Of a DNA stretch of 64,000 nt, positions 10,256-44,760 are shown one piece after another. This DNA comes from Eutreptiella sp. 'Long Island Sound 2002' (Eukaryota > Protista > Euglenida), in contig OZ038378.1 of assembly GCA_964036045.1 (NCBI GenBank), positions 96,224,001 through 96,288,000 of the forward strand, read 5' to 3'. The translations under genes and the position numbers were made by a program. Under the pieces are notes generated by a model, which was given only the letters and a program-made list of their open reading frames with translations, made no database searches and was not told the origin of the DNA. Numbering within the stretch: position 1 is the stretch's first letter; each line of letters opens with the position of its first letter.

Positions 10256-11070
10256 GGTAGGTAGGTAGGTAGGTATCTTCGGGAGCTCGGGATGCCTCCT
10301 TTGACATTGCAGGAAGAAGGTCTTACCCAGGGGACGTCCTGTCCCTCCCACTGCCCTATGTCAGGTGCCTCTTGAGCCGCTCCCGCATGTGCTTGGGAAG
10401 GCATTGTCGCGGCCACCCGGTCCATGTGTCCCAGGTGGGAGGGTGTCCCCACATGTGTCCATGGGTAGGGCCACATGCCCCCTCCTTTGGGCGGCAGCTC
10501 TGGGGGGCTGCCGAGCCGTGTGGAGTATCTCTCACCACAAGGGGTATTGCTCCCGCTTGTCTACGGCACGAACGCCTCACCCTTGTGGCTTGAGTTGCGG
10601 GGCCACTCTGCTTGGCAGGTGACCCCCTCCTGGACTGTGTACTGGCTCGCGTGTCACCGGTTGCTTCCATGGCTCCGGGTGACGTTTGCCATGGTCTCCA
10701 GTGCAGCCTGGCCGGGCTCGGACCAGTGGCCTTGGAGTACCGCTCCTGCCACTGGCCCGGTGGGTCGGCTGGGTCGCCCCAGTGCGTCCGACCCATGGGG
10801 TATTGGTTCTTTCCTGTCCCTCGGCCGCCCTACGTGTGTGCAGTGTCCTGGGCGGCTGGGCTCCTGTTCACCGGTGTGCCCGCGCGGTTTGCTGTGGTGC
10901 GTCTGCGGTGTCCTGGGCCAGCTGGCTCCTGTTCACCGGTGTTATCGCTCGGTGTGTTGTGTTGCATGTGCGGTGTCCTGGGCCACTAGGCTCCCGTTCA
11001 CCGGTGTGCGTGCTGTGTGCGGTGCGCGTGTGCCATGGGAGGTTGTGTCCCTCTTCCTCCCCCCCTAATT
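10256..11070 (+). mobile_element. Second-family (GGTA)n-capped insertion between the two transposon genes
   Basis: Begins (GGTA)4-5; the body differs from module A but has the same progression to GT-rich repeats (GGCTCCTGTTCACCGGTGT recurring 3-4 times). Right boundary uncertain. Confidence 0.55.
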
Positions 11071-11228: not shown

Positions 11229-13023
11229 ATGTCTGGCTACAAGCTATCTAGCCATGAGAAGGTGGTCCTGGAGGAAGGCCACGTGAACCCAATGTTATTG
11301 AAGTGCGTGGAGGATGATGTTGATATTCCTGCGCCGTCGACACCCATTTACACTGACCCTACCATGGTGCACGTGACAATCAATCATGCTTTTGGTCGTT
11401 GTCGGAACAAGCTTACGAAGCAGCACCAGAGCATGAGCCTGGATGCCTGGGTTACAGCAAATCAGCTGGCTGGCCAACGACCTTCTGGTGTTCCATTGAC
11501 TGAAAGGCAGAGAATTAATGCAGCCCGTCAGCCTCCGGTGCCTCCAAACGCCCTGCTAAAATTTTTGGGAGTCATCTGGAAATTACATGGAGTTGTTGAG
11601 CTTCATGCTCAAGCGGGGGAATGGATGCTATGGTTTTGCAGCACCCCCGCACCTGACATTTGGAATATTCCTATCCCTGAGGGCAAGCAGAAAGGGAGAC
11701 CTCCAGTAACATCTGCGCCACCACCTGCTATGAGATCGACATCTGCACCATTACAAGAACCAAGTGAGCCTCCATCACCAGTAGCAGCAGCACCAAATTG
11801 GAGCGCGACGTTGATTGCAGCCGTGACTGCTGGACTCCAGGAGAACGCGACAAAGCAGCGCCAATATGAGGTAGGCAACCTGTGAAGAGGTGCGCGCGTA
11901 ACGTGGGACGATTCATCTTAAAAATTCATCGTAACACGAATAATTCATCGTACGAGGAAAGCTATTCATTGTACAATGAAACAGTACGAGAAATGTCGTT
12001 CGTTCATTGCTCTTACCTCAGATTGAAGCTGTTGAGCGCTCAGCTGCAGGAGTTCGATTTGTTGTGGCCAATATTGGTACTGACCTTGGGGTTCAGCATG
12101 TTCTCACTGCAGAAGGCATCCTAATTTCAATGAGACGTGCACCAGCTCGAACATTGGGGATGCTACCAGGATTCGAGACCGATGAGAACGCAGCAAGAGC
12201 AATGCAGCATGAGCAGAAAAAGGCTGTTCACTGGGAGCCCTGGCAGAGCCCACTGAAAACGGCAACAACAACCGTGAAAATTGCAAAGCCCATTAACCCC
12301 AATGCCATGCGGACACTGCTTGCCCTCCAGGAACAAGCCACAAGGACGGGCACACCAAAGAGTAATGCAAAAAGTAATGAAAAAAGCGAACCGACAAAAG
12401 CAGCACCACCAGCCACCAGAAAACGCAAGTGGGAATCTGAGTCTGAAAACGAGGAGTCGGAAGAACCTGAGGAGGATGAAGGTGAAGACGAGGAAGAGGA
12501 ATATGACAGTGATGCCAGTGATGAAGTCGTCACCCAAACAACTCCAGCCAAAGGAATGAAGTGGTCGCATGTCCCATACCAGGCGGAGGCCACTGGCGAA
12601 TGGAAGGTGGCACCAGGGATCGCTCGTTGTTTTTCTGAGCCTAGAGGAACGAAGGTATCTGACGAACTAGTGGCTGAAGCGGAGCGGACTAAGAGCACTA
12701 TCTATTGGCTTCCTGACGATGCGACCGACAAGAGCTGGAATGTGGAAGGTCAATACCTTGCTGCTCGCATTGCGTTTCGCACTCTGGAAGAAGCCAAGCT
12801 TTACCGCAAAGGCATGACGCTGGCACTGAAGAAGCACAAAATGAAGGAACAGCAGCAGAAGGAGCGCGAAGCCTGCAAGGCACGCAAGGCAGAAGCTGCT
12901 GCAGAACCAGCTGCACCACCAGCACCAGCTGCAGATCAAGAAAAGCCCGAGGAACAAACAGATAAGGTGTCCGAAGGTGCAGGTGCGAGTGGTGCAGCGC
13001 CTGACGGTGCAAAGGGCAACTGA
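11229..13023 (+). CDS. Second gene of the RAG1-like transposon, unknown function (acidic stretch, K/A-rich C-terminus)
   Basis: First ATG (11229) after a T-tract plus CAG (11117/11123). Exon 1 open to 11870, GT-AG intron about 11871-12022, exon 2 open to TGA 13023 with no disruptions. Confidence 0.7.
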
Positions 13024-13383
13024 ACGTATCTTTTTTGATTGCTATTGAGTGTTGGAAGCGACAGTTACGACTTTCACTGTTACTGTGTCAGATTTTGGTG
13101 CGGACTTTTGCATGTTGCTTCTGTCGCGCTAAATTCATCGTAACCTTTCATCGTACGACAAAAAAAACCTTCCGTGCAAAAAGTTGCGGCGACAGGCAGA
13201 AACAGCGGCACACACGCGCACGGCATCTGCAGCAGGCACCCAACCACGGATTTGGAACCAATATGACCAAAAAAATGAAGGCAGAATGAATAAGATTTAA
13301 TTTCAAGATTTTCATCTTAAACCGTTTAAGATGAAAGATGAGTTCTGGTAAGATGAAACTAGGGACCAAGTGGGCGCGCGGGG

Positions 13384-18955: not shown

Positions 18956-20750
18956 TACATATACCTCGTTAGCTAGGAAAAGATGGCAAATGAGGTATCA
19001 TCTGACTCAAAAAACAGGAGATTGCTTCTGTTGGCAAAAAAGCCTTTTCCTCACTTTTGGTGAGACGAATACTAAGGTGAAAATGTGCAGTATCTCTGAG
19101 TGTCTCTTTCACAATCAAATGTACTTAGCAGGAACAGAGAATACACGTTTTCTTACTCCTCCCACGTGGGCTCGTTGCCACCACTGTTGCATTGTAAGGA
19201 AAAAAGGTATTCTTTCTGTCGGTCTATTTTGATGTTCCTGCATTCCTTTGAAACTACCTACATCCTCCCTAATCACCCCTGCAGTTGATACTGCAGAGCC
19301 AGTAGAATATCATCGCAGCTCCGCGTGATGCTCTTGCGGCGCTCAGACCGGGTTTGTGGCATGCATGGGGTTAGGGCATGCCTGCTGAAATGCTCATGTA
19401 TCTCTCCCTCCAATGTACACTACTCAGTCTAAAAGCTATACAAGCCCAGGTCAAGCGGATTAAGGGGTATGTACACCACCTGTTGCGGCACCTGACCTGG
19501 TATTTTATGCGTGATGCGAGCCTGGTATTTCCTGCCCCTCTCAATAGGGTCTCGGTCCTCTAATTCACGTCCAGGCTGCAGGCACCATCCGAGCGCGATG
19601 GTCTGCTCAGCAGCTAGCCAGGGACATTTGCAGAGATGGAACGCCTATGGATGATTCCTGATCCCTCACAGTTGATCAGCGTCTTTTGAGATCCATCCAA
19701 AAGGCACGCACATTTTTTATGAACAGACCATCCAGATCAGAATCCCGTTCAGCTTCCCATGCGCATTTTTGTTAAGATTCTCCTCGTCTTGAGCAATTTT
19801 CTATTCAAGAATTCATCAGCAAAAAAAGGGCAGCCGCATAGCACGTCCCAACTAACAGCCGTTAATTTACCAAAATGATGAAATTAACCGCGCATGTTAT
19901 GCATCTAAGAAGAAAGAAGAAATCTCATTGGAATAGTGGTGGTAAAGATTACGCGCACGCTTCCAGAAACAGCAGTCTGAGAAGAAAAAAAAGAAATTAC
20001 CAGAAGCGGCAGGTAACTCTGGCATACCTGCAGTTCTGTGTGCTTTGCTTCACCCCGTGCTCGTGCGTTCGTTGATTAGCATGCACACCATGGTTACAAA
20101 TTTTGAGGTGTACACACAGGATAGACAGGATGGATCTAAGGGACGTACGATCAGATGATGGATGATTAGCGCAGAGCAACTGGCCATCGGCCAGCGAGTG
20201 GTTGTTGCTGGAAGGTACTAGTACTGCCCCGCAATTCCCGACGTGGCAGCTGCGACACCTGTTCTCACACACCAAGGTCCCTCTCTTGATGAACTGATTA
20301 GATCATACACACGCATGCCTAAAATGATTTGCCTCGCTACATTGATACACTATTGTAATTTTTCCTTCTCGGTAGGTAAGGTGAGTAAGCCAAGGAGGGC
20401 GACCTCCTGGTACAGTGATACCCTGTTCTCGGACGTTGTTTGTGTGCCCCTTGAAGGGTTATGAAGCATGCCGGATGCATGTGATGAGTCAAAGGGCGTA
20501 GGCCATGCGCAGTGCACACCGCATGATGTTCGTTTAGTACTGAGGCACCTCCCTACATTCTCTAAGAGTACACGAGCTGTCTCTAGACCATGCTTCCTGG
20601 ATGCGAGCTTTTCCGAACTGCCGTATTCTTGTCATTGAAAGCCGAATAATAAGGGGAGTGGGATTTGTGTCTTGTTCGAAACTCATCTACATGTGCAGAC
20701 TTCTCTTCATGTGCAATAGGTGGGGTTAATGGTGCAACACAATCACGCTC

Positions 20751-20776
20751 ACTTTCTGAGTGTCCATTTTTTTTCG
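20751..20776 (+). other. Euglenid spliced-leader (SL) exon sequence
   Basis: ACTTTCTGAGTGTCCATTTTTTTTCG matches the 26-nt Euglena gracilis SL (ACTTTCTGAGTGTCTATTTTTTTTCG) at 25/26; ATG follows 22 nt downstream at 20799. Confidence 0.9.
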
Positions 20777-23299
20777 GTTGACCCACAGAATTTTTTCGAT
20801 GGCCCCACCAGTAGTCCAGGCTACTCGGTGATTTGCGAAAATCCTGGGCTGTCCAAGTTCTGGGACAAATCTGTGGACTATTGACAACAATCCCAAGGCC
20901 GCAAATTGGAGCCGAGGCAAGCGAAACACCCTTTCTGTCATTTGCTAGTTGCCTAGCGCAACAAAGCACTCGTGAACACCGTCCTAGCCACCTTGTTTGA
21001 CAACGCCGTTTTCGTGGCAATGTCGCAACCTGGGCCCAAGGAGCATTCCGCAATGTTCAAATCGGAAAGCAAGCAGCTAAAGTCCGTAAAATCTTTTAGT
21101 GCCCGGATTCAAGCTAAAGTGGACGACAAGTTGACTCAAACTTGTGTTATTCCTACTTATTCGTCTTGAAAATCACAGAATGACCCACTACACCCACCAC
21201 TCGATCTATTCCCGTCACGGGAAGAAGAATCATCATCTAATGTTACTTCAGACCATGAACACCCGAAGAAGTCGCAAAAGGTCTCTTTCCACCCGCCGAC
21301 AACACCAGTAACACCGCCAAAGAAAAAGGAGCCCAAGAACCACAACAACAATTCAAACTGCTCGCACCGCCAACCGACAGCGAGAACCTTCTGGACACCG
21401 AGCCTGAAGACACACACAGGAACACCGAGGGAAACCACTCATGTGATGCCGATGAGTTGGAGTTGACGACTCTGTTGTTATTTTCAAGCAAAATGAAGAG
21501 CTCTCGAACACCGTCATTGTCTACGGACAACAAACAACCCGAAGATATCGCAAAAGAACTCTTTTCACCCTCCGCCAACACCGGTAACACCGCAAAAGGA
21601 AAACCGTCATTGTCTACGGTTTCTCTCCCCGTCCTTCCTCCCCCTCTGCCTCCACCTCTGCCCGACACCTCTAAAGAAGAAATCGTACCGGGAGGCATTG
21701 AGAATTCGAGCGGAGAAGACCATCCCCCCGACAAGGTTCCGCTCTTCTGTTAAACCCTCAACCCCGATGCAGTGGTCGGCGCCTTTTGTGAACAATGGAA
21801 ATTGCTCTTACGTGAACAGGATCAACAAGCAGTTCTGGCCTAACCTTATAACGATGGAGAACCAGGCCTTGATTGAAATCAAATGATTCTCCAACATTAC
21901 CACCGCCAACCAATCTATGAAGCCATGCGCCCAACAATTGACTTGAGCGCAAGTGAATGGGTGCACCTTTTTTCACAAACTCAACACAACCGGCCCCACC
22001 GCATACTCCACCGTCGCACACAAAAACTTCCACTCTCTCTCTGACATATTGCACCATTACCCACGCTTCTACATTTTCCCCCACCAACAAGACTACTATA
22101 ACAACAAGAAAACGTTCGGCCACACTTGGTCCGAATGGGCAAAAAAAATAGGTGAAGTGCTCGGAGAAGCTTTTGAGTCCGGCGTGCTATACCATGGGTC
22201 CTTCATCATGCCTGGCATGGAAGACAATTTGTCGGCCCAAACCTTATTCATGAACCCTCTCAACCCAGGGTTTGTTCTCTTTAGCCCGTTGGATATGTGT
22301 CATAGATTGCCTACGGGACGCCCGCACTTACAACCCGACGGTCCATTCGGACGGTGTGATTCTGCCGGTCTCTTTGGCTGATCCCATGTATCCCTAGTTG
22401 CATATACACTTGTCTACCAAAACCAAACACCATGTTTCCATTGCCTACGGCAACATCATGCTACCACCCTCGTCACTCCAATCGGCGGTGAAAAAGGTGA
22501 ACGCTTAGATCCAACTTCAAAGCGTAAAATCCCCGGTCCGCTTTGAAATCGCCCGCCACCTCTTACCCAACTTCAAGGTCCCTCCAAAAACCAATGAGGA
22601 AAGGGGCTCGCCGCCGGCGAGGCAACACCTGAGATTTTTTCGTGCTCACGAACCGACTTTTCCACTTCGACGATGACGAAATCACGGTACGCACCCACAA
22701 TGCCAAATACCCCAAAGAACACATACAACCACTCACCCCATCTTCCGGAAGAATGTTTCGTTTTGATTACACGATCTCCACCCCCCTTGCCAAGGAATTG
22801 TTAGGCAGGCTCATGAGACACCTCTTGTGGACCATGGGAAACGTCTTTGCTATCAACAGTGCCGACCTCGCGCGAGAGATCACGTTCAAAATCAGGTCGT
22901 CTAAGTTTTTCAAACGCGGCTCCCCCGACTTTCAACCCGTCGACGTGTGGAGAGCCATTCTCACTAGGGAGGCTGTCCGCCGGTGTTGTGTTTTGGGAGC
23001 CAGCTCCCGCACTTACAACAAATTCCATGTGTGCATGAACTACAACCACATGCCGGCAATGCCTAACAAAGACTCCCTCACCACGATGTTCTTCATGCTT
23101 TTCCAAGAAAACAACTTGGTCCCCTACCGAGGCACAACAGGTGCGATGATCTCCTGGGGCAGTTACGCCTCTCGGCGTGCTAAACACCCGGGGCAACAAA
23201 ATGACACATCCATCACACGCACTGCTCCCGAGTCGCCTGCGTCCCCAAATACTCGCACCCCGACTCCTCAATATATCCCACCGCCAAATCCAGAGACCC

Positions 23300-23510
23300 C
23301 GATGCTAGTGGAGGTCCACTCCGCAGCAAATACCCCGGACGTGGATGTCATGTTCGCCATTGCTTTGCTGGGCAAGATAAAACACATAACTCTCTACAGC
23401 TCTAAGATCGCCCGTGTCCAAGTCTATCATGTCACTTACGCGACCCGAGAGACAGCTATCCCTGCCACAGGTTTCCATGTGGGACAAATGGCTCTTCACC
23501 GGAAGTCCCC
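23300..23510 (+). pseudogene. Possible RRM-like domain in LINE-A ORF1 region
   Basis: LVEVH..helix..LLGKIKHITL...YHVTYATRETAIPATGFHVGQMAL resembles the beta-alpha-beta-beta-alpha-beta RRM pattern; by eye only. Confidence 0.35.
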
Positions 23511-23735
23511 GATACGCTGAAACGAGATTCCATGCTCGGCGCATCAAACCCGTTAGTGAACGAACACTACGACTTTGTGAGCAGGACGCTGGCTGCAGCG
23601 GCGGCATATGGTAGTGCGGAACAACTCAAGGTTGCGAGGGACCACTATCTCACCACTATCAACCCTCTAACACTCACAGAAAAGGTTTCTCAACCTGCGG
23701 TGCATGATTCTGACGATTGGGAACCCATTGAGGGG

Positions 23736-24270
23736 CTCCCGGGCGCCTTTCTAGCCCTGGATTCCTTTTTCCGAGGACGAAGAATCCCTCCTCACCGCGT
23801 GGGCAGAGGACCCTGAACTTGATTGGTCTGAAGAGGGTGAGCGTCCCCTCATCAATCACGGTCACGCCTACGACCCTGAGCTTAAGTCAGTCACCACTGT
23901 GGACAGTCTACGGGCGCATGAGTCCGCTGTAATGCATACTCAGTGCCCCCCGCCCCCCACCGCCAACATGTGGTCGCTTGCCGAGTATGAACCAGGTTCC
24001 GGCGTCAAGAGCTAGGTGGATGTGGGAGCCCTGGGCAGCTACTCCCTGAGTGGATCCTTGGGCTATGGAGCCGGGATCGTCTTTGAGCACAGGCCTTTCC
24101 CCAACAGCGGGCCCCCTAAAAGGAAAAAGCGCATCTTCCTTCAGCGCAGTTCTCTTCTGCTCCTGACGGGTGACTCCAGGTCACGCTGCAAACACTTGAT
24201 ACCAGCTAGGGACTTTGACTTAGTGGGGAAAACAAACCCCTGCGAGAAACAGCTCTCCTTGTTGATTAGG
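23736..24270 (+). pseudogene. AlkB-family 2OG-Fe(II) dioxygenase domain within LINE-A
   Basis: With two frameshifts in homopolymer runs it reads LPGAFLALDSFSEDEESLL..W....RPLINHGHAYD...NMWSLAEYEPGSGVKS*VD....SGSLG....VF....LQRSSLLLLTGDSRSRCKHLIPARDFD...EKQLSLLIR. The HxD His position is TAG (24013-24015). Confidence 0.8.
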
Positions 24271-25261
24271 ACTACCCATGAGCCACTCCGCACTCATCTG
24301 TCGGTACAAGACCCCAGAGAGCCCCCAGAGTAGCCTGCCCCACAGCTGCATTAATAAATATTTCGAGCCCCACCGCGGCGCCACCAGGAAGGCTACCCTT
24401 GCCCCAACCCTTCATCCACACAACTTTGAATGTTTTAACTGGTTTCCCCTCCAATGGCACCGGGATTTTGAATGTCAGCGCTCACCCCTCGCCTCTCTCG
24501 CTCACCCTGACCCGCACCCTCCTCCCCACAGACGCCCGGACCCAGGCCAGATGCGTCAACGTGCTGGACTCCACGACATCATACGGCGATCTATCATGGA
24601 CGAGGGGAAGGTGTGCGCTCTGTTGTACGTTGCCACCTGTCAATGCATTATTTGCCCAACCCCCTGTAGTCTGTATGGGATACTTTTGAAGCCCAGATGG
24701 GGCCTGCGACGGGCGCACTGTCGCACAGGACACAGATCCATGGAAGCTACTGTATATCGGGGCTCTGTCCCTTGCAACGGACTACCTGTCTGCAATTCTT
24801 CCTGTGTGCCTCTTGGCGTCACACACTGTTGCTCTGGCCAGAAGCTGACCCCCCTTGTACATATACATCCTTTCCTAATCACCATGCCCGCCATCACGAA
24901 GCCCTCATTCCGAGCATTATGAGAACGTGTGCCCGCGTGCTCGCCCGCTTGGGCGTTACAGGGGCCACGCTTCGCAGAACCCTGCACAAAATGAACTCCG
25001 CTCCTCCCCTCGCTTCTGCCCCGACCACTTCCACTGCGCGCTTCCGCCAAACGGTCATCAACGACCACCTCTCACCACCCCAACAATTCCTTCCCCCATC
25101 TCCTCCATCTGCAAGTCCCATGCCACGGGATTGCCCGACTCGAGTCATCTCCCCCCCTGTTAGGAACCCAGCAAACCCCCCTTTTTCCTTACCACCCCAA
25201 GTCAATAAAAATCATAAACCCCATTACGCCCGCCAACCCCCCCCCTCCATACCGTCCATCA

Positions 25262-25970
25262 CGGCCCTGCGCGTTCTCAGCATAAATGTCGAAAAAAGCA
25301 ATGACAACTCTGGCATCATTTTACATTTTCTCCGCAAGGGTTATGACATAATCCTCCCCCAAGAACGCAACTCTCTGCCCCCTGCCTCACCAGTTCTCTG
25401 TTGGTCTTGACAAGGCAAAAGTCTTCGGAAACGTGGGGAGCAATCGACACAGCTCCGCCATTGTCTTCGGCCCCAGGATAGCAAAATATGCGTCCTCGAT
25501 TCCAGACCACGACCATGAAGGCCTCATCTCCGGAGCAGTCCTGGCTCTCCCTGAAGCCCCGGCACTTGGCGTATTTTCTGTGTACTCTCCCCACTGCCTA
25601 CTGGAGCCCCTGCGCCTTTTCGTGATATCATTGAACGTCGCCTTGCCTACGTTTTCAATGAGTACACCCGCAACATCGTAGGAGGGGGTTTCAACTGTGT
25701 CATTGAACCAGCCTTAGACCAACATGGCCAATCTGACCCTCATCGATGGCCCTGGCTTTCCGGCGAAGTCACCTACGTCACTGCTAGACTTGTCGACACC
25801 TTTGGCTCACATCACCCCTCCGGCCAAGAGTACACGGGGTACAAATGTGCTCGATGGAATAGTGAGTGTAGGCTCAACTATAATTTCGCCTCCCCCACCA
25901 AGGTGGCCATATTCCCCGTTCTAGAGGAATCAATGCTTACCGGACACATATATTCCAACCATCACCCAGG
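25262..25970 (+). pseudogene. AP-endonuclease domain of LINE-A
   Basis: LRVLSINV, DIILPQE, GGGFNC (GDFN), LVDTF, RLNY (RLDY), SNHHP (SDH). Confidence 0.85.
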
Positions 25971-26689
25971 CTCTGCAACATTCCAATGCCCCGCCCCCAT
26001 TCTACTCGCTAAACCACCCCTCACCCCTTTCGTTTACCAAAAATTCAATGAGGAAGAAAAATCCATATACACCTCTCGACTCCTTCACTTGGCCACCTGC
26101 TGCCACAATGCTAAAGATTTAGTTGACACAGCGGATGCCGGCCAACTCATCCCTGCTGTTGACTCACCTTTGTCACAGATGGCAACAGCCTTTCACAAGA
26201 TCACGAGTCGTCGACCCGATCGTAAACACGTAGCGAACACAAAGCGGCTACATTCCTTGGAACGCGACACCCCTCCGCCCTCCTCTCCCTCCTTCTCTGC
26301 GCACATCGCAAAAGTCCAGGACACCGTAGAGTCCCTGCGTGCTTCCAACGACTCTGATGCCATCCGCAAACTCGACAGGAGCCTGGTCCAGGGCTGCAAA
26401 ATGAAAACCGTAGCCAGTGAAACCCTATGTCCCAACTACATGCATCTCACTTTGGTTCGCGACCCTGCTACGGGACAGATAGAGCAAGACCCGGTGCGCG
26501 TCGCGAAGATCTTCGGCTCCACACTGCAGCACCTTGGTGGGGACCCCTCTTACCGTCCTCCCCCTGGGTTTGTCGACGAAGTCCTCGCCTACTCCCCCTC
26601 CTGCCCTGCTCTGGCGGCACTGGAGGCCATTCCTTATGTTTCATGGAATGTTTTTGCGGCCCACCTGAAGCACAGCAAACCCAGCAAAT

Positions 26690-27600
26690 CTGGCGGTGGT
26701 GACCGTACCGATAACAATCATTTGCACCTTGCACCTGAACCGATTGAAACATTTTCTTCGCGGGTTTTGAATAGGTTTTTAAGTTCTCCAATGCCACACC
26801 ACTGGCTTGGGTCATACATTTGCCTCCTCTACAAATGCGGCGACCCTTACCAAGCCGCCAACTACAGACCCATTGCATTACTTAACACAGTATACAAACT
26901 TGTTGCCATCTTCACACGCGTCTCACCTGTAGCAACAAACCCTTAACCTCTCCCTACTTTCCCCCATCCAACAAGGGGGACTCCCCCGCCATCAGTGTAC
27001 CGACCACATATACCACACGAAGAGTTTATACGCTCGCTCTAAAAGTGGTTACTCCCTCTACGTCGACTTCAACAAAGCCTTTAATTCTGTTCCACTGTCC
27101 AAGCTGTGGACAGTGCTCGAGCCTTCAAACCTTCCTTGCGCCGCCATTACGTTGGTGAAAAACCTCTACGCATCCCCTGTGGATGCTCTAAAAATTAACG
27201 GGCATTGCCCCAACACCTATGTCCAGGCCTGCGGCCTGCGTGAAGGCTGTGCTCGGTCTCCCATTCTTTTCATCTTATACTTAAACGCCCTTTCCTCTTA
27301 CTTCTTGGCCACTACCCCTTCCCCCGAACAAGGTTGCGTCACCAGCCACAAAGCCTTCATTGACGATATTTTGATCCGCAGCGAGGACCCGTCCTATATA
27401 CAGCGAGCTATCAACTTTCTTCGACGGCCTGGCTAGATTGCGGGGCCCCGATATGAATTTAAAAAAAAACAATCCCAGGCCATGGGCCAAGCAGTGCAGC
27501 GCACCTTCACCACCGCCGCGGGCAGCTCATTTCCCACTTTTGACCCCAAAACCTCCCGCCCACGGACCCATTATAAATACCAGGGGGTCTACATTTTTAC
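26690..27600 (+). pseudogene. Reverse transcriptase domain of LINE-A
   Basis: G.D, LYKCGDPYQAANYRPIALLN, VDFNKAFNSV, GLREGCARSP, FIDDILI, YKYQGV; several stops and frameshifts. Confidence 0.9.
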
Positions 27601-28234
27601 TCAGCACCAAGCGGAAGGGCCAGACACCATGATTTGGGCTGAAATTTTAAGCTATCTTTCCCGATTGTCTCCGCTCCCCCTAACTCTCAGGCTCCTACCC
27701 CCTCACGCACAGCAGATTGCCCGACGCCGCGCCCAATGCACAACCGCCGCCCTTGACCCAGCCCCAGGTGGACAACCCGGGGAGCCCCCCCCCCTGCGAG
27801 ACCAACGACGGGAACCTCCCACGGCAGCCGTCCAGAACATGCCACATCAACTCACCAAATGTCACCTCCTACACGACCACGATGCCAACAACGAGACGCG
27901 GCGGAGCTACACATTACCCCTGCAGTGGACATCACCACAAGGCACCTTCACGTGGGGGGAAATCATCCCCGGCACCACGGCGCTCACATACCTATGGCTC
28001 CCGGATGCGAAGACTCATGCACAACCCCCCGGCACACACCTCCTCCTCACCCTGGAAATAGAGGCTGTCATCCAAGACATTCACACCACAGAGGGAGAGG
28101 ACTACGTGACGGCCAACGCGGACACCAGAGTGGCGTTACACACCAAAGAACACACCACACCCCGAACCGCAATACCAGGGTCACACCCTTGGCACGTGAC
28201 TATCGTACACCTACCCGCAGGGGCACACACGGAA

Positions 28235-31200
28235 GAGGCCCGGCAATGGTGCATGATCAGGTAGGCACAAGTGTGTACCATCCTGCACGAAGGGCGCAAA
28301 AGCCCTCCCTCACCAGCCACATCCCACAGCCTGCCCCCACCCCGGGGAATCCCACGTCGAGACAGCTCTTCCCCACCGGAGTCCTGGGCTACACACGCAC
28401 CCTCTGCCGCGGGGCAGTGGAGGCTCTCAAGACCACCATCTCCAGCCGGCCCATGATTACAAGGAGGAAGGCTACACCCTGTGGTGGCAGCAGCCCACGC
28501 CGAATGGGGGCGTCCAAACACCGGCCGACCAACCTGGCCTTGGCCCGGAGCTCACTGTGATCGCCCGCGCCATCGCTAACATGGTCGAGGAAGTTGGGGC
28601 GCCACTCCAATGGACACCAGCCATCATAAAAGAGGCGGCAGCACGCCACAACCCAGCATTCTCACACTTCAGGGGCAGCCGCATCCATCAACCCCCTACC
28701 AGACCTCAACCTCCGAACCCACAATGAGTCGGCTGTCCACATCTTCGTGCCCAATGACACCGCACCCAAAGCAGGGGACGGTACAGCGCACGTCACCAAA
28801 CAGGTTGCCAGCACCACGCTCCACTATGACATACCAACAACGAAGGTCATGGTCACCCACAAAACCGGCCGCGACAACTACTGCCTCCACGCCACACACA
28901 AGCGCTCCGCGATCAGCATTTACAGGTTCACCATCTACCCGAGCCTCCAGTCACCGCAACGCCACTCAAGGCTGGAGTGGAGGCATGCGCTGCACATCTC
29001 CCAAGCCCGACGCAAAAGGCCCGCGCAGCACACGCCCCCTTCTGACGACTGCACGGTCCTCCACGCAGCCCCCCGATGAGCCGCTGCACAACACCACAAT
29101 AGCCTACTCCCACGCATTAGCAATGGGCCGGGCACAGGTACTGACACCCCCCCCCAAGAGCACAATGAAACTACTAGCCCGAAAGCTGCGCCCCAAAATG
29201 GCGCTAGGCGACACGCTCTGGGTATACCATGGGAAAAGCCTCACAGCACGGTTGGCTGAACTCCGGAACTTCATCCCCCATCACACACAACGCGCGATGG
29301 GACCCTTGACCATTTACACGGTGCCGCACCCCATAACAGCCCAGTGCACCCACTGCAACCCCCGGTGCGCGCATCCATGCGGGGGCACTCTGCAACAACC
29401 CCTGCCCATCCCTACAGAGGGGGCATATACCGTGGCACTATACCCAGAGACCCAAACCCTTACTTCCTACCCGCGGTCGACTGCCACCACGGCATAGTAG
29501 GCGACCTGTCGAGTACCTGGCAGTGGGACCGTCCCTCTTCCTGAGACGCCCCCCCTACACCCCGTCCGACAAGCGCCCGCCAGTTGAGCCAACAGACGCT
29601 CCTCACTCCAAAGGCGGCAGCCAGCATCCCCTGAGACCCAGAAGGGGTAAACCACCTCGTGGTGCAGGGGCTGACGGAACAGGTCCCTAGTGCGGCCAGT
29701 TGGCACAAGACGCCCCTGAGGACTGCCAAGGACATCTACCCTGTCATCCTCATGTGAGCGCCCCGAAGAGCCAATCCCGTAGTGTGCCCCATCACACTCG
29801 TAGGCTTGGACGCAATAGACGCACTCCCGGCCATCACGGAAGTAGAGTCCTCAAGCACCAGGAGACCCCCCGGACGTCCGATTTGTTGGACCACGGCAAG
29901 GTCAGGAGGGCGACAGCGCAGACTCCGGATGACTAGGTACCGCCCCAGCAATGTGGCGGCGACCGCCTGCGACTCGCCGCCCCTGTCCTCCACACCCAAA
30001 AAGGCGGCCTGGAAAGCGCTCCACAACACCCTTTACTAGGCGCAGGGGGCTCCAAGAGCCCCCTCCCCGGGGACCCATTCAGGCGCAAAAGCGCCACGCC
30101 ACACGCCTGACAAAGACGTGCTCCGCCATGCGCTCGACTAGGGCTCCTCACTCGGCCCACAGACCCACCTGACGCCCTACAGGCGGCCGAGGAGACGCTC
30201 GGCCTCATGAGCAGGCAGGTGTCCCGGCTGACGGATGCTGTTCCAACGTGAAAGCCCGACATCCCAGCGACCCGTTGAACACCCAGTGTCCACACCAAGC
30301 CACGACACAGCCCAGAGGCGCAGCACCCCAAAGAAGCTGGCGCGATGCCCCGCAACGTCAGGGTACGAAGAAACACAAAGCCCGCATACAGCCCGAACCC
30401 CCGACGAAACGCAGGCTGAAAAGTTGGACCAGGGAGGAAGCCGCCGCACTATACCCCGAGTTGGCCGTGGGTACCCAAGTTCAACTACCCTTCGAGTTTG
30501 CAACAGCCGCAGGCCCCGCAACTTGGATATGGGCAGCGGGCGAGGTTGCCCATCGGTACCTTTTCACAGAAGAACACCAGGGAATCAACGTCTGCGTCAA
30601 GTGGGACCCAGCAAGCCCCGGGGACAAGAATAAGGCGCAAACCGTTGAGCTCTGCCGGGGCTACAACCGTCAGAAGATGGTCGCCATGCAATTGTGCACC
30701 TCCGACACAGAGAACCTCACCCGCAGCACATACACGGGCGAAGTCCACAATGCATGGCCCCCGCTCAAGCCTCAGAAGCACATTTCGCAAGGCGTCCGCA
30801 GCTCGGGGCGTCATCGACCTTCTCCAAGGCTGACAGGGCCCGGGTCGGAAAAAGACCACCACCATGACTGCCGGTCCCTAACAGCCAGCGCCCACAGAAG
30901 CCCATGCACACATCAACATCCTCAACGAACCTGCGGTCACCTACGACCCCACCAAGGCTGCCACGCTGCAAGCCATGCCACCAGGGCGCAGACCTTCTCG
31001 GGTTCCTGGAACAAGCCCTCCATAGGGCGGACCAGCCCGAATCTGCCCCAGTCTTGAACTGAGAGGGGAACAAATACCAGGCCCACTGGCAGCGAGGGGT
31101 GCCCCTTTACCACAAGGCAACAGTCGCCGTACACCCCCACACTGACCTCGGGATCATCGGCCCCCTGAGAAGGTACGAGTGCGCCGAGCCTGGATGGCAG

Positions 31201-34200
31201 CACAACGTGCTACTCACGCACGTCTGCTTTGGCAAGGCCATGAAGGATTTCCTGGACGGCCTGAGCCTGGCATACCGTCGTCTTTCCCTCCCAGTGACCA
31301 CCATCATCGTTGGCAACCTAAAAACTGCCCCAACCGAGGACGATCACACCAGTCCAACCACAGCCACCAACACTGCCAACCGGGACGCTGTGCATTAAAT
31401 GTGCACCACCAACCTCACAGCAGGACTCACCGGCATACCCTCCCACCAACCCAACCCGGCCGGCACCCATCCCTCCCGCATCGACACGTGCCACGGGGAC
31501 GCAACCACGGTACACGTCAACGAGGCAACCTACGGGGACTTCCGACCCGCAGGCACGGCGCACAGCCCCTCTACATCGACCTCATCATCCCGAACCACCA
31601 TGCCTGACAACAGCCTCCCGGCCGCGCTGCAGTTCCGACTCCAAGACAACCACAGCCCCTGGCACAAATCTAACAGTGCGCATCACGCCATTATCTGCCG
31701 CAATGCTGCACCAACACTCACGACCGCCATGTGCCAGGCAGCGCAAGGGTGCGGCAGCCCCCAACTGGATAGATGGGAGGCACAGTGCCAAAGAAGGGTG
31801 CGGCATGGCACCCGACACTAACCACACGGAAACGGTGCCGGACCTCCCACTCCAACAACTCATCCGTCACATTAGGAACACAAAAGAGGAGCTTACCACC
31901 CTAAGAGACCCCACCACCCTCCTCACCACCCCCCGCCACCAGCTCCAGGGCTGGCACGCCCAGCGCATGGCAGCCGCCGCCCAGGAACGCGAAAGATACG
32001 GCAGAAACGACATGCCGTACACTTAGCCCACGCAAACTGCACCCCCTTTTTTAAGCGAAGCACCAAAGTTTTGTCATCGAAAAAATAGTTTTTTTGCCAT
32101 TTCGAAGGTGCTGTTTTCCAAAGCCCCCAGAGAAATGCATTACCTACGAAGTTTGCCCATTTTGTGGCTTTTCTCAGGGGGGTAAAAGAATAATCTTTCA
32201 GTCCAAATCAGAGGTCTTACGGGTCATTTTCCCCGAAAAAAAATTTGGTTCGCAAATTTCAAGTATACCAATTTTTGGAACTTCTGAAAAAATGTTAACG
32301 ACGGGGGCTGTTGACACAACGTGTGCATGTCTGAATGAACAGCTAATTATTGGAGGAGGCTGAGTGCTCGAGGCCTCGCGCACTCAGTCACCTGAAGTAA
32401 GATTTTCAGGCCTTTTTGACACGAGTTTTTGACATCGCAAGTGGCATGAAGCAAGAATGGAGCTAACGCAAAACTGCAACACACAGCGGAACACTCAGTG
32501 GGCGAGGCACCGGCAATGGTTCATGAACAGGTAGGCACAAGTGTGTACCATCCTGCACGAAGGGTGGAAAAACCCTCCCTCACCAGCCACATCCCTCAGC
32601 CTGCCCCCACCATGGGCGAATCCCACATCAAGACAGCCCTTCCCCACCGGAGTCTGGGGCTACACACGCACCCTCCGCCGCGGAACAGTGGAGGCCCTCA
32701 AGACCACCATCTCCAGCAAACCCATGATTACAAGGAAAAAGGCTAGACCCTGTGGTGGCAGCACCTCGCGCCAGATGGGGGCCTCCAAACATCAGCCGAC
32801 CAACCTGGCCTTGGCCCGGAGCTCACAGCGATCGCCCGCGCCGTCGCTAACATGGTCGAGGAAGTCCGGGCGCCACCCCAATGGACACCAGCCATCCTCA
32901 AAGAGGCGGCAGCACGCCACAACCCGGCATTCTCACACTTCAGGGGAGGCCACATCCATCAACGCCTACCAGACCTTGACCTCCCAACCCACAATGAGTC
33001 GGCTGTCCATATCTTCGTACCCCATGACACCGCACCGAAGGCACGGGACGGTACGGCGCGCGTCACCAAACATCTTGCCAGCACCACGATCCACTACGAC
33101 ACACCACCACTGAAGGTCATGGTCACTCACAAAACCGGCCGCGACAACTACTGCCTCCACGCCACACACAAGCGCTCCCCCATCAGCATTTACAAGTTCA
33201 CCATCTACTGCGGCCTCCAGTCACCGCAACGCCACCCAGGGCTGGAGTGGAGGCATCCGCTGCACATCCCCTAAGCCCTACGCAAAAGGCCCGCGCAGCA
33301 CCCGCCCCTTTCCGACGACTGCACAGTCCTCCACGCAGCCCCCCGATGAGCCGCTGCACAACACCACAATAGCCTACTCCCACGCATTAGCCCTGGGCCG
33401 GGCACAGGTACCGAGGCCCTCCGCAAGAGCACAATGAAACTACTCGCCCGAAAGCTGCGCCCGAGAATGGCGCTAGGGGACACACTCCGGGTATACCATG
33501 GGAAAAGCCTCACAGCACGGTTGGTGGAACTCCGGAACTTCATCCCCCACCACACACAACGCGCGATGGGACCCTTGACCATTTACACGGTGCCGCACCC
33601 CATAACGGCCCAGTGCACCCACTGCAACCCCCGGTGCGCACATCCATGCGGGGGCACTCTGCAACAACCCCTGCCCATCCCCACCTACAGAGGGGGCATA
33701 TACCGCGCCACTATACCCAGGGACCCAAACCCTTACTTCTTACCCGCGGCGGACTGCCACCACGGCATAGTACTCGACCTGTCGAGTACCTGGCAGTGGG
33801 ACTGTCCCTCTTCCTGAGACGCCCCCCCTACACCCCGTCCAACAAGCGCCCGCCAGTTGAGCGAACAGACGCCTCACAGGGACCCGAACGAGCCATCGTG
33901 CTCCTCACTCCAAAGGCTGCAGCCACCATCCCCTGAGACCCAGAAGGGGTAAACCACCTCGTGGTGCAGGGGCTGACAGAACAGGTCCCTAGTGCGGCCA
34001 CGTACGCTAGGACAGCCGCCTCCCGCCTCCGGGAGGACCGCTCCTCTCCAACCCTAGGCCAGTTGGCACAAGACGCCCCTGAGGACCGCCAAGGACATCT
34101 ACCCTGTCCTCCTCATGTGAGTGCCCTGAAGAGCCAATCCCGTAGTGTGCCCCATCACGCTCGTAGGCTTGGACGCAATAGATGCACTTCCGGCCATCAC

Positions 34201-36488
34201 GGAAGTACGAGTCCTCAAGCACCAGGAGACCCCCCGGACGTCCGAATTGGTGGAGTACCGCAAGGTCAGGCAGGCGACAGCGCGGACCCCTGATAACGAG
34301 GTACCGCCCCTGCAACGTCCTCCACACCCCAAAGGCGGCCTGGAAAGCGGTACACAATACCCTCTACTGGGCGCAGGGGGCGCCAAGAGCCCCCTCCCCG
34401 GGGACCCATTCAGGCGCGAAAGCGCCACGCCACCTGCCTGGCGGAGGACTGCGCCGCCATGTGCTCGACTAGGGCTCCTCACTCGGCCCACAGACCCACC
34501 TGACGCCCTACAGACGGCCAAGGAGACGCTGGGCCTCATGAGCAGGGGGTGTTCCAGCTGACGGATGCCGTTCCAACGTGAAAGCCCGACATCCCAGCGA
34601 CCCTTGAACACCCAATGTCCACACAAAGCCACGACACAGCCAAGAGGCGCAGCACCCGAAAGGAGCCGGCGCGATGCCCCGCAACATCAGGGTACGAGGA
34701 AACACAAAGCCCGCACACAGCCCGAACCCCCCACGAAACGCAGGCTGAAAAGTTGGACCAGGGAGGAAGCCGCCGCACTATACCCCGAGTTGGCCGTGGG
34801 TACCCAAGTTCAACTACCCTTCAAGTTTGCAACAGCCGCAGGCCCCTCAACGTGAATATGGGCAGCAGGCGAGGTTGCCCATCGGTACCGTTTCACAGAA
34901 GAACACCAGGGATTCAACGTCTGCGTCAAGTGGGACCCAGCAAGCCTCACAGACAAGAAGGACGGGCAAACTGTGGAGCTCTGCCGGGGCTACAACGGTC
35001 AGGAGGTGGTCGCCATGCAATTGTGCACCCCCAACACAGAGGACCTCACCCGCACCACATACACGGGCAAAGTCCACAATGCATGGCCCCCGCTCAAGCC
35101 CCAGAAGCACATTTCGCAAGGCGTCTGCAGCTTGAGGCGTCATCGACCTCCTCCAAGGCTGATGGGGCCCGGGTCGGAAAAAGACCACCACCAGGACCGC
35201 CGGTCCCTAACAGCCAGCGCCCACAGAAGCCCATGCACACATCAACATCCTCAACGAACTCGCGGTCACCTACGACCCCACCAAGGCCGCCACGCTCACG
35301 ATCACACCAGTCCAACCGCAGCCACCAACATTGCCAACCGGGACGCAATGCATTAAATGTGCCTCACCAACCTCACAGCAGGACTCACTGGCATACCCTC
35401 CGACCACCGACACCAGGCTGGCACCCAGCCCTCCCGCATCAACACGTGCTACCTGGACGCAACCACGGTACACGTCAACGAGACAACCTACGGGGACTTC
35501 CGACCCGCAGGCACGGCGCACAGCCCCTCTACATCGACCTCATCATCCCCAACCACCATGCCTGACAACAGCCTCCCGGCCGCGCTGCAGTTCCCACTCG
35601 AAGACAACCACAGCCCCTGGCACAAATCTAACAGTGCGCATCACGCCATCCTCTGACGCAATGCTGCACCAACACTCACGACCACCATGCGCCAGGCAGC
35701 GCAAGGGTGCGGCAGCCCCCACCCGGATAGATGGGAGGCACAGTGCCAAAGAAGGGTGCGGCATGGCACCCGACACTAACCGCAGGGAAACGGCGCCGGA
35801 CATCGCACTCCACCAACTCATCAGTCACATTTGGAACACAGGAGAGGAGCTTGCCACCCTAAGAGACCCCACCACGCTCCCCACCACCCCCCGCCACCAG
35901 CTCCAGGGGTGGCACGCCCAGCGCATGTCAGCCGCCGCCCAAGAACGCGAAAGATACGGCAGAAATGACATGCCGTACACTTAGCCCACGCAAACTGCAC
36001 CCCCTTTTTCAAGCGAAGCACCAAAGTTTTGAAATCGAGAAAATAGTTTTTTTGCCTTTTTGAAGGTGCTGTTTTCCACAGCCCCCAGAGAAATGCATTA
36101 CGTACCCAGTTTGCCCATTTTGCAGCTGTCCTCAGGGGGGTAAAAGAAAAGTTTTTCAGTCCAAATCAGAGGGCTTACCAGTCATTTTCCCCGAAAAAGA
36201 ATTTGGTTCGCAAATTTTGAAGTATATCAATTTTTGGAACTTCTGACAAAATATTAACGATGGGGGCTGTTGACACAACGTGTGCATGTCCGCATGAAAA
36301 AAGAATTATCATAGGAGGCTGAGTGCTCGAGGCCTCGCGCACTCAGCCACCTGAAGTAAGAGATCCCGGCCTTTTTGAGACGAGTTTTTGACATCGCAAG
36401 TGGCATGAAGCAAGAATGGAGCTAAAGCAAAACTGCAACATTCAATATGGGTTAAACGGTTACACAGCGGAACACTCAGTGGGCGAGG
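28235..36488 (+). repeat. Tandem duplication of about 4.2/4.0 kb (LINE-B segment plus left part of the MITE)
   Basis: 28235-32507 aligns with 32503-36488 (about 90% by eye, reciprocal indels); the junction shares GAGGC microhomology. Confidence 0.9.
32022..32507. mobile_element. Truncated duplicate of the left part of the 1.2-kb MITE
   Basis: Same GTACA-CTTAGCCCACGCAAACTGCACCC start as 35975 onward; ends at the duplication junction. Confidence 0.85.
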
Positions 36489-44049: not shown

Positions 44050-44760
44050 CAAATATGAGGAATGTACATGTAAAAATGTTTTCATGTAAAAATGGGCAAA
44101 AATGGCCGTTTTTTGGTCAAAAATTGAGTTTTTTGGCTTCCAAAAAACAGTTGAAGACCCCCCCCTATTTTGAGGGTATTGGATGCGAGACAGCAGGTAG
44201 TAGAGGCACAAAGATCACAAAACCTCCATTTACAGAATCCGTATGCACCAAAATTTGCCATTTGTCATGAAAAAATGGCGAAGTATGCCCGTTTTTTGGT
44301 CAAAAATTGAGTTTTTTGGCTTCAGACAAGCATTTGAAGACCCCCCTGCCTCATTTCGAGGGTGCTGGATGTGAGAGTGTACGTGATGGAGGCACACAGA
44401 TCACGAAAACTCCATTTACAGCATGCATATGCACCAAAATGTGCCATTTTTCATGTAAAAAGGGGCAAAAATTGCCGTTTTTTGGTCAAAAATTGAGTTT
44501 TTTGGCTTCAGAAAAACAAATGAAGACCCCCTCCCTATTTTGAGGGTGCTGGATGCGAAGAATGCAGATTTTAGAGGCAGACAGATCACAAAAACACAGT
44601 TTGCAGCATGCGTATGCACCACAACGTGCCATTTTTCTTGGAAAAATGGCCAAAAATGCCCATTTTCTGGTCAAAAAATGAGTTTTTCGGCCTCAGATAA
44701 GCAGTTGAAGACCCCCCCCCCTATTTTGAGGGTGCTGGATGCAAAAACGTATGGTATACC
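44050..44760. repeat. ~184-bp tandem repeat, about 4 copies
   Basis: GTTTTTTGGTCAAAAATTGAG anchors at about 44108, 44291, 44477 and 44661. Confidence 0.9.

What the first reader, a model, noticed from the sequence alone, without database searches (positions are those of the whole stretch)
23300..27600. LINE carrying an AlkB-family dioxygenase upstream of APE-RT (RRM?-AlkB-APE-RT)
Seen: a collinear AlkB signature (PG.....F.EDEE..L, R....G..Y, Y.PG.G..HxD, SLG, L..SSLLLLTG..R....H.I..R..D, terminal R) on the same strand and coding block, about 1 kb before the endonuclease. Established: AlkB enzymes oxidatively demethylate DNA/RNA (m1A, m3C, and m6A for some members); some plant RNA viruses carry AlkB; human ALKBH8 has an RRM before AlkB. 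Inference: a retrotransposon-encoded demethylase that could protect or unmark its RNA or cDNA or counter host base modification. I am not aware of this architecture in LINEs. This copy is inactivated (TAG at the His position, frameshifts).
Basis: partly seen in the sequence, partly recalled or inferred. Interest (0 to 1): 0.88.

Follow-up and report, generated by a model that had tools for sequence, protein, structure and literature searches.

The report
Dead LINE copy with AlkB enzyme
This is a broken copy of a jumping gene (LINE) from a Euglena-like alga whose first protein ends in an AlkB-type oxidising enzyme; the enzyme belongs to the whole LINE group and selection has kept it, I found no paper reporting it for any LINE, and its target is unknown.

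Summary
Window 20747-27690 (+) is a degraded, 3'-truncated LINE copy.

AlkB is not a one-off capture. Each window piece finds at least 150 loci in the same 2.28-Gb euglenid genome. Intact relatives pass Pfam PF13532 and fold as AlkB (pLDDT >90; best matches ALKBH6, Ofd2, ALKBH8). Four deep lineages, with ORF1 only 23-27% identical between the most distant, all keep the domain at the ORF1 C-terminus.

Selection: substitutions shared between copies are 2 non-synonymous to 11 synonymous in AlkB (p = 8e-6).

- AlkB is the C-terminal domain of a roughly 1130-aa ORF1, not part of the APE-RT coding block. ORF2 starts at its own ATG (24278) in another frame.
- ORF2 is APE-RT-RNase H in intact relatives.
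- The "RRM" is not supported.

Substrate and activity are untested. My best guess is demethylation of the element's own RNA.

I found no paper on AlkB in a LINE; the nearest precedents are orchid Ty3/Gypsy AlkB and plant-virus AlkB. Other agents of this scan already reported this family on other DNA of this genome.

The parts
20747..27690 (+). Whole degraded LINE copy ('family B'); 3'-truncated within ORF2 after the RT
   Evidence: One 7009-bp blastn alignment at 88% identity to L041 2002-8998. tblastn with ORF1 and ORF2 of relatives covers 20957-27664 and nothing further in the window.
20749..20775 (+). Spliced-leader-like sequence forming the 5' end of the element
   Evidence: CACTTTCTGAGTGTCCATTTTTTTTC sits at the exact start of homology. 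The same leader starts L045 and L041. Contigs of small cDNA-like runs match only this stretch of L045, 1916-1956, and then diverge.
21020..24333 (+). ORF1 remnant (ATG 21020; stop TAG 24331-24333)
   Evidence: 65-83% aa identity to the intact 1138-codon open frame of L041. Seven frameshifting indels and eight in-frame stops relative to L041.
23302..23520 (+).
   Evidence: Alignable across lineages A-D. No RRM signal from Pfam, hhalign or PDB. Low-confidence model.
23727..24270 (+). AlkB-type Fe(II)/2OG dioxygenase domain remnant
   Evidence: Motif coordinates. Non-LINE AlkB profile gives E = 1.2e-13 and 1.4e-5. Lesions: +1 bp at 23764, -30 bp at 23906, +3 bp at 23950, -3 bp at 24237. The first Arg of RxSxxxR is Gln here (KQLSLLIR, against KRLSLLIR in L041).
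24013..24015 (+). TAG at the His codon of the HxD iron-binding motif
   Evidence: The codon is CAC in L041. The context reads ...GVKS*VD.
24278..27690 (+). ORF2 remnant: own ATG at 24278 in another frame, a Pro-rich N-terminal region, an APE-like region at about 25270-26010, and the RT
   Evidence: ORF1/ORF2 overlap. 42-49% aa identity to L043 ORF2 residues 62-1012. L043 ORF2 carries Exo_endo_phos, RVT_1 and RNase_H. Eight frameshifting indels relative to L041, whose own ORF2 is also broken.
26933..27433 (+). Reverse transcriptase domain
   Evidence: Pfam RVT_1, E = 6.4e-15, 55.8 bits, above the cut-off of 29.6.

Best explanation
Shown. The window holds an old, dead, 3'-truncated copy of a euglenid non-LTR retrotransposon.

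In intact relatives the element is about 9.4 kb and has these parts:
- a spliced-leader 5' end;
- ORF1 of about 1130 aa, made of a disordered N-terminus, an orphan middle domain of about 500 aa, a conserved module of about 75 aa, and a C-terminal AlkB-type Fe(II)/2-oxoglutarate dioxygenase;
- ORF2 in another frame, overlapping the end of ORF1, carrying an AP-endonuclease, a reverse transcriptase and RNase H;
- a poly(A) tail and a target-site duplication.

The AlkB domain keeps the iron ligands (HxD...H) and the 2OG-binding arginines. It has been under purifying selection in the lineages that kept transposing. It is shared by at least four deeply diverged lineages of the element.

Inferred mechanism. 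ORF1p binds the element's own RNA, as LINE ORF1 proteins do, which brings the tethered dioxygenase to that RNA or to the nascent cDNA. There it oxidatively removes base methylation. Candidates are m1A/m3C-type lesions that stall reverse transcription, or an m6A-type mark that flags the RNA. Either would raise the yield of full-length insertions or escape host control. Substrate and activity are not shown.
For: Family-wide presence:
- Each window piece finds at least 150 scored loci (466 and 591 candidates), many inside open frames of 1118-1228 aa.
- PF13532 finds 1108 candidates in the genome; all 150 scored exceed Pfam's cut-off.

Domain identity:
- PF13532 scores 41.5 and 39.0 bits in intact family A ORF1s, above the cut-off of 31.2.
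- The best solved relative by sequence is ALKBH8 (E = 4e-12 with one sequence, 1e-13 with a profile).
- The AlphaFold model of the domain has pLDDT >90. Foldseek matches ALKBH6 (E = 7e-16, TM 0.72), Ofd2 (TM 0.74-0.77), ALKBH8, ALKBH5, ALKBH3 and E. coli AlkB.

Catalytic residues:
- The HxD His and Asp, the second His and the first Arg of RxSxxxR are invariant between families A and B, which are 43-47% identical. The second Arg is kept except in two decayed gene models.
- They are retained in 53/56, 53/56, 40/47, 39/43 and 32/38 of the family's predicted proteins.

Selection:
- Mean pairwise dN/dS is 0.33-0.38 in the AlkB domain of family A and 0.41-0.51 in family B.
- In 7 distinct intact copies, substitutions shared by two or more copies are 2 non-synonymous to 11 synonymous in AlkB. 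The neutral expectation is 76% non-synonymous (p = 8e-6). Private substitutions are 26 to 15, close to neutral.

Depth of the architecture:
- Lineages C (L052, L057) and D (L064) have a collinear ORF1 with the middle domain followed by AlkB, at 23-27% identity to A and B over about 800 aa. In L064, ORF2 follows directly.
- The LINE AlkB domains form one clade (98/95 for A-C; 63/94 for A-D with a mixture model).

LINE hallmarks:
- APE, RT and RNase H in ORF2.
- Poly(A) tail and a target-site duplication of about 11-13 bp.

Precedents for the mechanism:
- Plant-virus AlkB domains repair m1A and m3C in RNA (PMC2553587).
- An orchid Ty3/Gypsy-encoded AlkB demethylates m6A in vitro (PMC9289625).
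Against: - No enzymatic or expression data. No public RNA run held the LINE body; three very small cDNA-like sets matched only the spliced leader.
- The closest solved relatives are not classical repair or m6A demethylases. ALKBH8 hydroxylates a tRNA wobble uridine, and to my knowledge ALKBH6 and Ofd2 have no defined nucleic-acid demethylase activity.
- Lineage C has HxE instead of HxD.
- RNA binding by this ORF1 is assumed, not shown. Its middle domain has no recognisable fold or family.
- The dN/dS sample is small (7 distinct copies), was chosen for intact ORF1, and is not corrected for transition bias.
Confidence: 0.6

Rival explanations
1. The AlkB segment is a one-off capture, a nested retrocopy of a host ALKBH gene, or an assembly chimera specific to this copy.
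For: Pfam does not score the window's own pieces. This copy is heavily damaged.
Against: Hundreds of copies carry the domain at the same position in ORF1. A second, independent assembly (ENA ERZ25074135) carries the same proteins. Four deep lineages share the architecture. The host AlkB genes sampled (L050, L051, L053) lie elsewhere in the tree, and at least L050 appears to be split by an intron.
Confidence: 0.01
2. The domain acts on DNA rather than RNA. It might remove 6mA or alkyl lesions from the single-stranded cDNA or the target site, or reset adenine methylation around new insertions in a genome that uses 6mA and heavy 5mC.
For: AlkB-family members include DNA demethylases; E. coli AlkB, ALKBH3 and NMAD-1 appear among the fold matches. 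A preprint reports that the Euglena epigenome carries promoter-associated 6mA and heavy 5mC, and that other Euglena retrotransposons carry DNA adenine and cytosine methyltransferases (10.64898/2026.05.21.726589).
Against: The closest relatives by sequence and fold are ALKBH8, ALKBH6 and Ofd2, not ALKBH1, ALKBH4 or NMAD-1. The domain is fused to ORF1, which in LINEs is the RNA-binding partner, not to ORF2, which handles DNA. That preprint does not mention AlkB.
Confidence: 0.2
3. The domain is not a nucleic-acid demethylase. It may be an ALKBH8-like tRNA-modifying hydroxylase, a protein hydroxylase, or a mainly structural or binding module like Ofd2 or ALKBH6.
For: The best solved sequence match is ALKBH8, and the best fold matches are ALKBH6 and Ofd2. 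Lineage C has HxE at the metal site.
Against: The iron and 2OG ligands are conserved under selection across lineages A, B and D, which argues for catalysis. There is no ALKBH8-type methyltransferase domain and no detectable RRM. The LINE clade does not nest inside the ALKBH8-type proteins.
Confidence: 0.15

Closest known systems
AlkB (2-ODD) ORF of Phalaenopsis Ty3/Gypsy (Tat/Ogre-like) LTR retrotransposons (PMC9289625)
   Same: A retrotransposon-encoded AlkB-family dioxygenase carried at the C-terminus of an accessory protein. It is fixed in a lineage and proposed to counter RNA methylation of the element.
   Different: That element is an LTR retrotransposon in a plant. Its domain sits in an extra ORF after pol, is a recent acquisition in one lineage, resembles plant m6A demethylases, and has in vitro activity. 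Here the host element is a LINE in a euglenid, the domain is fused to ORF1, it is old (four lineages down to 23-27% ORF1 identity), it is closest to ALKBH8, ALKBH6 and Ofd2, and it has no assay.
AlkB domains of plant RNA viruses (Flexiviridae; PMC2553587)
   Same: A selfish RNA-templated replicator carries its own AlkB. The shown activity, repair of m1A and m3C in RNA, is the model for 'template cleaning'.
   Different: Those domains lie inside a viral replicase polyprotein and are related to bacterial-type AlkB. Here the domain is in a retrotransposon ORF1 protein and is of a different AlkB subgroup.
Human ALKBH8 (PDB 3thp/3tht), ALKBH6 (7vjs) and S. pombe Ofd2 (5ylb)
   Same: Closest solved relatives by sequence (E = 1e-13, 3e-9 and 7e-5 with the profile) and by fold (TM 0.7-0.77 for ALKBH6 and Ofd2). 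Same HxD...H and Arg ligands.
   Different: Only 23-26% identity. No ALKBH8 methyltransferase domain and no detectable RRM. These are cellular single-copy genes, whereas this is a domain of a transposon protein present in hundreds of copies.
LINE ORF1 proteins with an enzymatic domain (esterase-type ORF1 of CR1/L2-like elements; from my own knowledge, not tested here)
   Same: They show that a LINE ORF1 can carry an enzyme domain in addition to its nucleic-acid-binding role.
   Different: A different enzyme class (SGNH hydrolase against Fe/2OG dioxygenase) and different LINE clades.

Membership tests
AlkB-like 2OG-Fe(II) oxygenases (Pfam PF13532) | Profile match above the curated cut-off | tested here: met
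   Intact relatives score 41.5 and 39.0 bits against a cut-off of 31.2. All 150 scored genomic loci exceed the cut-off. L041, the closest relative of the window copy, scores 28 bits, just below. The window's broken pieces do not score in Pfam, but they do score against a profile built only from non-LINE AlkB homologues (E = 1e-13 and 1e-5).
AlkB-like 2OG-Fe(II) oxygenases (Pfam PF13532) | HxD...H iron-binding triad | tested here: met
   Invariant in families A and B and present in lineage D. Lineage C has HxE. In the window copy the first His codon is TAG.
AlkB-like 2OG-Fe(II) oxygenases (Pfam PF13532) | Two conserved Arg residues (RxSxxxR) that bind 2-oxoglutarate | tested here: met
   Present in A, B, C and D. 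The first Arg is Gln in the window copy.
AlkB-like 2OG-Fe(II) oxygenases (Pfam PF13532) | Double-stranded beta-helix fold of AlkB type | tested here: met
   AlphaFold pLDDT >90 over the domain. Foldseek matches to ALKBH6, Ofd2, ALKBH8, ALKBH5, ALKBH3 and AlkB all have E below 1e-10.
AlkB-like 2OG-Fe(II) oxygenases (Pfam PF13532) | Fe(II)/2OG-dependent oxidation of a substrate | not testable with these tools
   Needs a biochemical assay.
ALKBH8 subfamily | RRM directly N-terminal to the AlkB domain | tested here: not met
   No RRM_1 hit at E up to 0.1 on whole ORF1s. hhalign probability 0.2% against the RRM of an ALKBH8-type protein. No PDB hit. The model is low-confidence there, so a very divergent RRM-like fold is not excluded.
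ALKBH8 subfamily | C-terminal SAM-dependent methyltransferase domain | tested here: not met
   ORF1 ends about 20 residues after the AlkB domain. ALKBH8-type hits of the profile do carry Methyltransf_11.
ALKBH8 subfamily | Phylogenetic placement inside ALKBH8-type proteins | tested here: inconclusive
   The LINE clade branches outside the sampled ALKBH8-type group, but the deep nodes are unsupported.
Non-LTR retrotransposon (LINE) with APE-type endonuclease | Reverse transcriptase of the non-LTR type | tested here: met
   RVT_1 in the window at 26933-27433, E = 6e-15, and 110 bits in L043 ORF2.
Non-LTR retrotransposon (LINE) with APE-type endonuclease | AP-endonuclease domain N-terminal to the RT | tested here: met
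   Exo_endo_phos at residues 217-445 of L043 ORF2. In the window it is shown only by homology (42% identity); Pfam is silent on the window pieces.
Non-LTR retrotransposon (LINE) with APE-type endonuclease | Poly(A) 3' end, target-site duplication, many dispersed copies | tested here: met
   Full-length family A copies end in A10-A14, and one has the flanking repeat GAGGAAGACCC. There are hundreds of loci. The window copy itself lacks its 3' end.
Named LINE clade (Ingi, I, Tad1 and other RNase H-bearing clades) | RT phylogeny with reference elements | not tested
   No reference RT set was available. The RT search found at least 20 related lineages in the same species at 35-48% identity, and only unnamed hits at 29% or less elsewhere.

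The most novel reading that the evidence does not exclude
A whole, ancient clade of euglenid LINEs depends on an ORF1p-tethered AlkB 'eraser' that strips methyl marks or lesions from the element's own spliced-leader-capped RNA, or its cDNA, before or during target-primed reverse transcription. This would be the first LINE-encoded nucleic-acid-modification enzyme of this kind. Together with the methyltransferase-bearing LTR and DIRS elements reported in Euglena, it would suggest that base modification is a main battleground between this host and its transposons.
Probability: 0.35. Interest if true: 0.85.

Novelty: new variant of a known kind. Interest (0 to 1): 0.7.

Why it matters
Extra enzymatic domains are rarely fixed in retrotransposons, and when they are they point to the host defence that the element must overcome. 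AlkB is known in plant RNA viruses and in one orchid LTR-retrotransposon lineage. Finding it fused to ORF1p of a large, old and diversified LINE clade would extend 'self-encoded demethylase' to non-LTR elements and to a very distant eukaryotic group. It also gives a testable handle on whether RNA or DNA base methylation limits target-primed reverse transcription, and it supplies a natural set of diverged AlkB domains for biochemistry. The copy in this window is a fossil and has no function of its own.

Tried and rejected
- Pfam on the window's stop-free pieces gave no AlkB or APE hit, only RVT_1. I did not search a read-through of the broken gene as one protein, because such a string has no reference.
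- NCBIfam on ORF1 found nothing.
- The ESM Atlas feature search of the ORF1 middle domain gave best scores of 0.77 to unnamed clusters, which is not informative.
- AlphaFold of the ORF1 middle domain with a 10-row alignment gave pLDDT 34, so the model is unusable and was not searched.
- The RRM hypothesis for the pre-AlkB module found no support.
- Expression: no public run on record as RNA holds the element. Three tiny cDNA-like sets matched only the spliced leader. This is no evidence of silence.
Three more full-length copies from a second assembly came from the look-up of encoding contigs instead, so the selection test rests on 7 distinct copies.
- Copies of three more distant ORF2 lineages (L065-L067, 36-45% RT identity) show no AlkB or ORF1 homology within 6 kb upstream. 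They may be 5'-truncated, so this neither shows nor excludes AlkB-less sister lineages.
- Word-based protein searches found relatives only in one ENA assembly of what is evidently the same species. The exhaustive profile search found no close relative elsewhere; the next best hits are stand-alone AlkB proteins at E of about 1e-21.
- The one-off capture reading is rejected (see rivals).
Full report
**What is in the window**

Exact coordinates are:
- IEGLPGAF at 23727-23750.
- FSEDEE at 23767-23784.
- HGHAY at 23857-23871.
- EYEPGSGVKS at 23983-24012, followed by TAG (24013-24015) and then V-D, so the stop sits at the His of HxD.
- SLLLLTG at 24151-24171.
- CKHLIPAR at 24187-24210.
- KQLSLLIR at 24247-24270.

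Pfam does not score the broken pieces and finds only RVT_1 at 26933-27433 (E = 6e-15). A profile built only from 50 cellular AlkB homologues, with no LINE rows, does score them. It gives E = 1.2e-13 for 24016-24330 and E = 1.4e-5 for 23755-24012, in collinear profile positions, against all 1300 six-frame segments of the window.

**Extent and state of this copy**

- The copy runs from 20747 to 27690 as one 7-kb alignment at 88% identity to a relative, L041.
- It starts with a euglenid spliced-leader-like sequence. Contigs of small cDNA-like runs match only that leader in a relative and then diverge. Together with earlier notes of this scan, this identifies the genome as Euglena-like.
- Against L041, ORF1 (ATG 21020, stop 24331-24333) has 7 frameshifts and 8 in-frame stops.
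- Within the AlkB domain there is a +1 at 23764, a -30 at 23906, a +3 at 23950, the TAG at the His codon (CAC in L041) and a -3 at 24237.
- The first 2OG-binding Arg is Gln in this copy.
- Homology stops at 27690, just after the RT, at about residue 1012 of an ORF2 of roughly 1780 aa. No RNase H part is found anywhere else in the window.
- Two copies of a roughly 4.3-kb direct repeat follow.

**Architecture in intact relatives**

- The genome (2.28 Gb) holds at least 150 scored loci for each AlkB piece, many inside open frames of 1118-1228 aa.
- An intact ORF1 (1134 aa from its ATG) passes PF13532 above Pfam's cut-off at its C-terminus.
- ORF2 carries Exo_endo_phos, RVT_1 and RNase_H.
- ORF2 has its own ATG in another frame. 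It lies 14 nt before the ORF1 stop in family A, and at 24278 in the window, about 50 nt before the ORF1 stop. AlkB is therefore the C-terminal domain of ORF1p and is not fused to APE-RT.
- Full-length copies are about 9.4 kb and end in poly(A). One has a clear target-site duplication.

**Is it a real AlkB?**

- By sequence, the best solved relative is ALKBH8 (E = 4e-12 with one sequence, 1e-13 with a profile). S. pombe Ofd2, ALKBH6 and ALKBH5 follow.
- An AlphaFold model built on 60 sequences gives pLDDT >90 over the domain.
- Foldseek matches ALKBH6 (E = 7e-16, TM 0.72), Ofd2 (TM 0.74-0.77), ALKBH8, ALKBH5, ALKBH3 and E. coli AlkB.
- The HxD motif, the second His and the first Arg of RxSxxxR are invariant between two families that are only 43-47% identical. 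These residues and the second Arg are kept in most of 76 predicted family proteins.
- The 130 residues before the domain are modelled poorly. A conserved module of about 75 aa is there, but Pfam, hhalign against an ALKBH8-type RRM (probability 0.2%) and a PDB profile search give no RRM signal.
- The 500-aa middle domain of ORF1 is an orphan.

**Is it a family trait under selection?**

- The window copy belongs to a small, old lineage, 'family B', with about 20 loci at 60-83% aa identity to the window pieces.
- The main lineage, 'family A', has hundreds of copies. One 90%-identity cluster alone has 113 member sequences.
- Searching with a cellular AlkB protein revealed lineage C, and looking up the contig of a related ORF2 revealed lineage D. 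In both, ORF1 is collinear with A and B (middle domain followed by AlkB) at only 23-27% identity over about 800 aa.
- In lineage D, ORF2 (48% RT identity) follows directly.
- In trees with cellular homologues and three host AlkB genes, the LINE domains form one clade. Support is 98/95 for A-C and 63/94 for A-D under a mixture model. Long branches were flagged, so a single origin is likely but not proven.
- Mean pairwise dN/dS in AlkB is 0.33-0.38 for family A and 0.41-0.51 for family B. This is similar to most of the rest of ORF1.
- In 7 distinct intact family A copies, substitutions shared by two or more copies have passed through transposition. In AlkB these are 2 non-synonymous to 11 synonymous, against a neutral expectation of 76% non-synonymous (p = 8e-6). 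Private substitutions are 26 to 15, close to neutral.

**Distribution and literature**

- Word-based searches and an exhaustive profile search of 1.84 billion representative proteins found close relatives only in one ENA assembly with Mb-scale contigs, evidently the same species. The next hits are stand-alone AlkB proteins at E of about 1e-21.
- Full-text searches found no paper that describes AlkB in a LINE.
- The closest precedents are the orchid Ty3/Gypsy AlkB with in vitro m6A demethylase activity (PMC9289625) and plant-virus AlkB that repairs m1A and m3C in RNA (PMC2553587).
- A 2026 preprint on methyltransferase-bearing retrotransposons covers Euglena but does not mention AlkB.
- Other agents of this scan have already reported the same family on other DNA of this genome. 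My tests are independent of theirs and agree with them.

**Mechanism**

Shown: the architecture, the intact catalytic ligands, purifying selection and the deep conservation.

Inferred: ORF1p binds its own RNA and brings the dioxygenase to the RNA or the cDNA, where it removes methyl lesions or marks that would block reverse transcription or flag the transcript.

Rivals are action on DNA (6mA or lesion repair) and a role other than nucleic-acid demethylation, as in ALKBH8, ALKBH6 or Ofd2. No expression or activity data could be obtained.

**Limits and compliance**

Noticed in passing
window 28240-36440: Directly after the LINE breakpoint at 27690 lie two copies of a roughly 4.3-kb direct repeat, 87-97% identical, C- and A-rich on the + strand. 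The long ORFs in 28.6-42.7 kb that I scanned have no Pfam hit. They could be long LTRs or a large tandem unit that displaced the LINE 3' end.
   Followed up: partly
window 44079-44787: A tandem array of about four units of about 185 bp, 62-92% identical (repeat finder).
   Followed up: no
window 10259-10972 and 12749-13383: These stretches match the flanks of unrelated LINE loci: L045 1-714 at 97%, and a stretch about 13.6-14.2 kb into the L041+L047 region at 90%. They are therefore other dispersed repeats, lying inside the region other notes call a Transib-like transposon or foldback.
   Followed up: no
L052, L054, L057, L058 (G000 C7, C14, C13, C27): LINE lineage C: its ORF1 ends in an AlkB domain whose metal motif reads HxE (GDHFEN) instead of HxD. 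The copies are nearly identical, so the lineage is young.
   Followed up: partly
L064 404-10701 (ENA ERZ25074135 ctg9828): A LINE of lineage D (ORF1 with AlkB, plus ORF2) sits inside a polyketide-synthase gene. The gene caller fused the PKS domains and the LINE AlkB into one 1602-aa model.
   Followed up: partly
L050 292-2724 (G000 C8:12.91 Mb); also L051 and L053: Cellular-looking AlkB genes of the host. L050 has an RRM-like stretch in a separate upstream open frame, apparently across an intron, followed by an AlkB domain and a long low-complexity tail, which resembles ALKBH8. None of the three is sister to the LINE AlkB clade.
   Followed up: partly
L045 1916-1945, L041 about 2005-2030, window 20749-20775: Full-length copies of families A and B begin with the spliced-leader sequence, so the transposing RNA appears to have been trans-spliced. 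This is already noted separately by the scan for this window.
   Followed up: partly
G000, one search list (for example C2:6044265, C948:8181, C17:12019649, C1:167492476): The strongest PF13532 loci in the genome (83-106 bits, open frames 311-683 aa) are not the LINE families studied here. They could be host genes or AlkB domains of other element classes, since earlier notes mention a chromovirus with AlkB. I could not fetch them.
   Followed up: no
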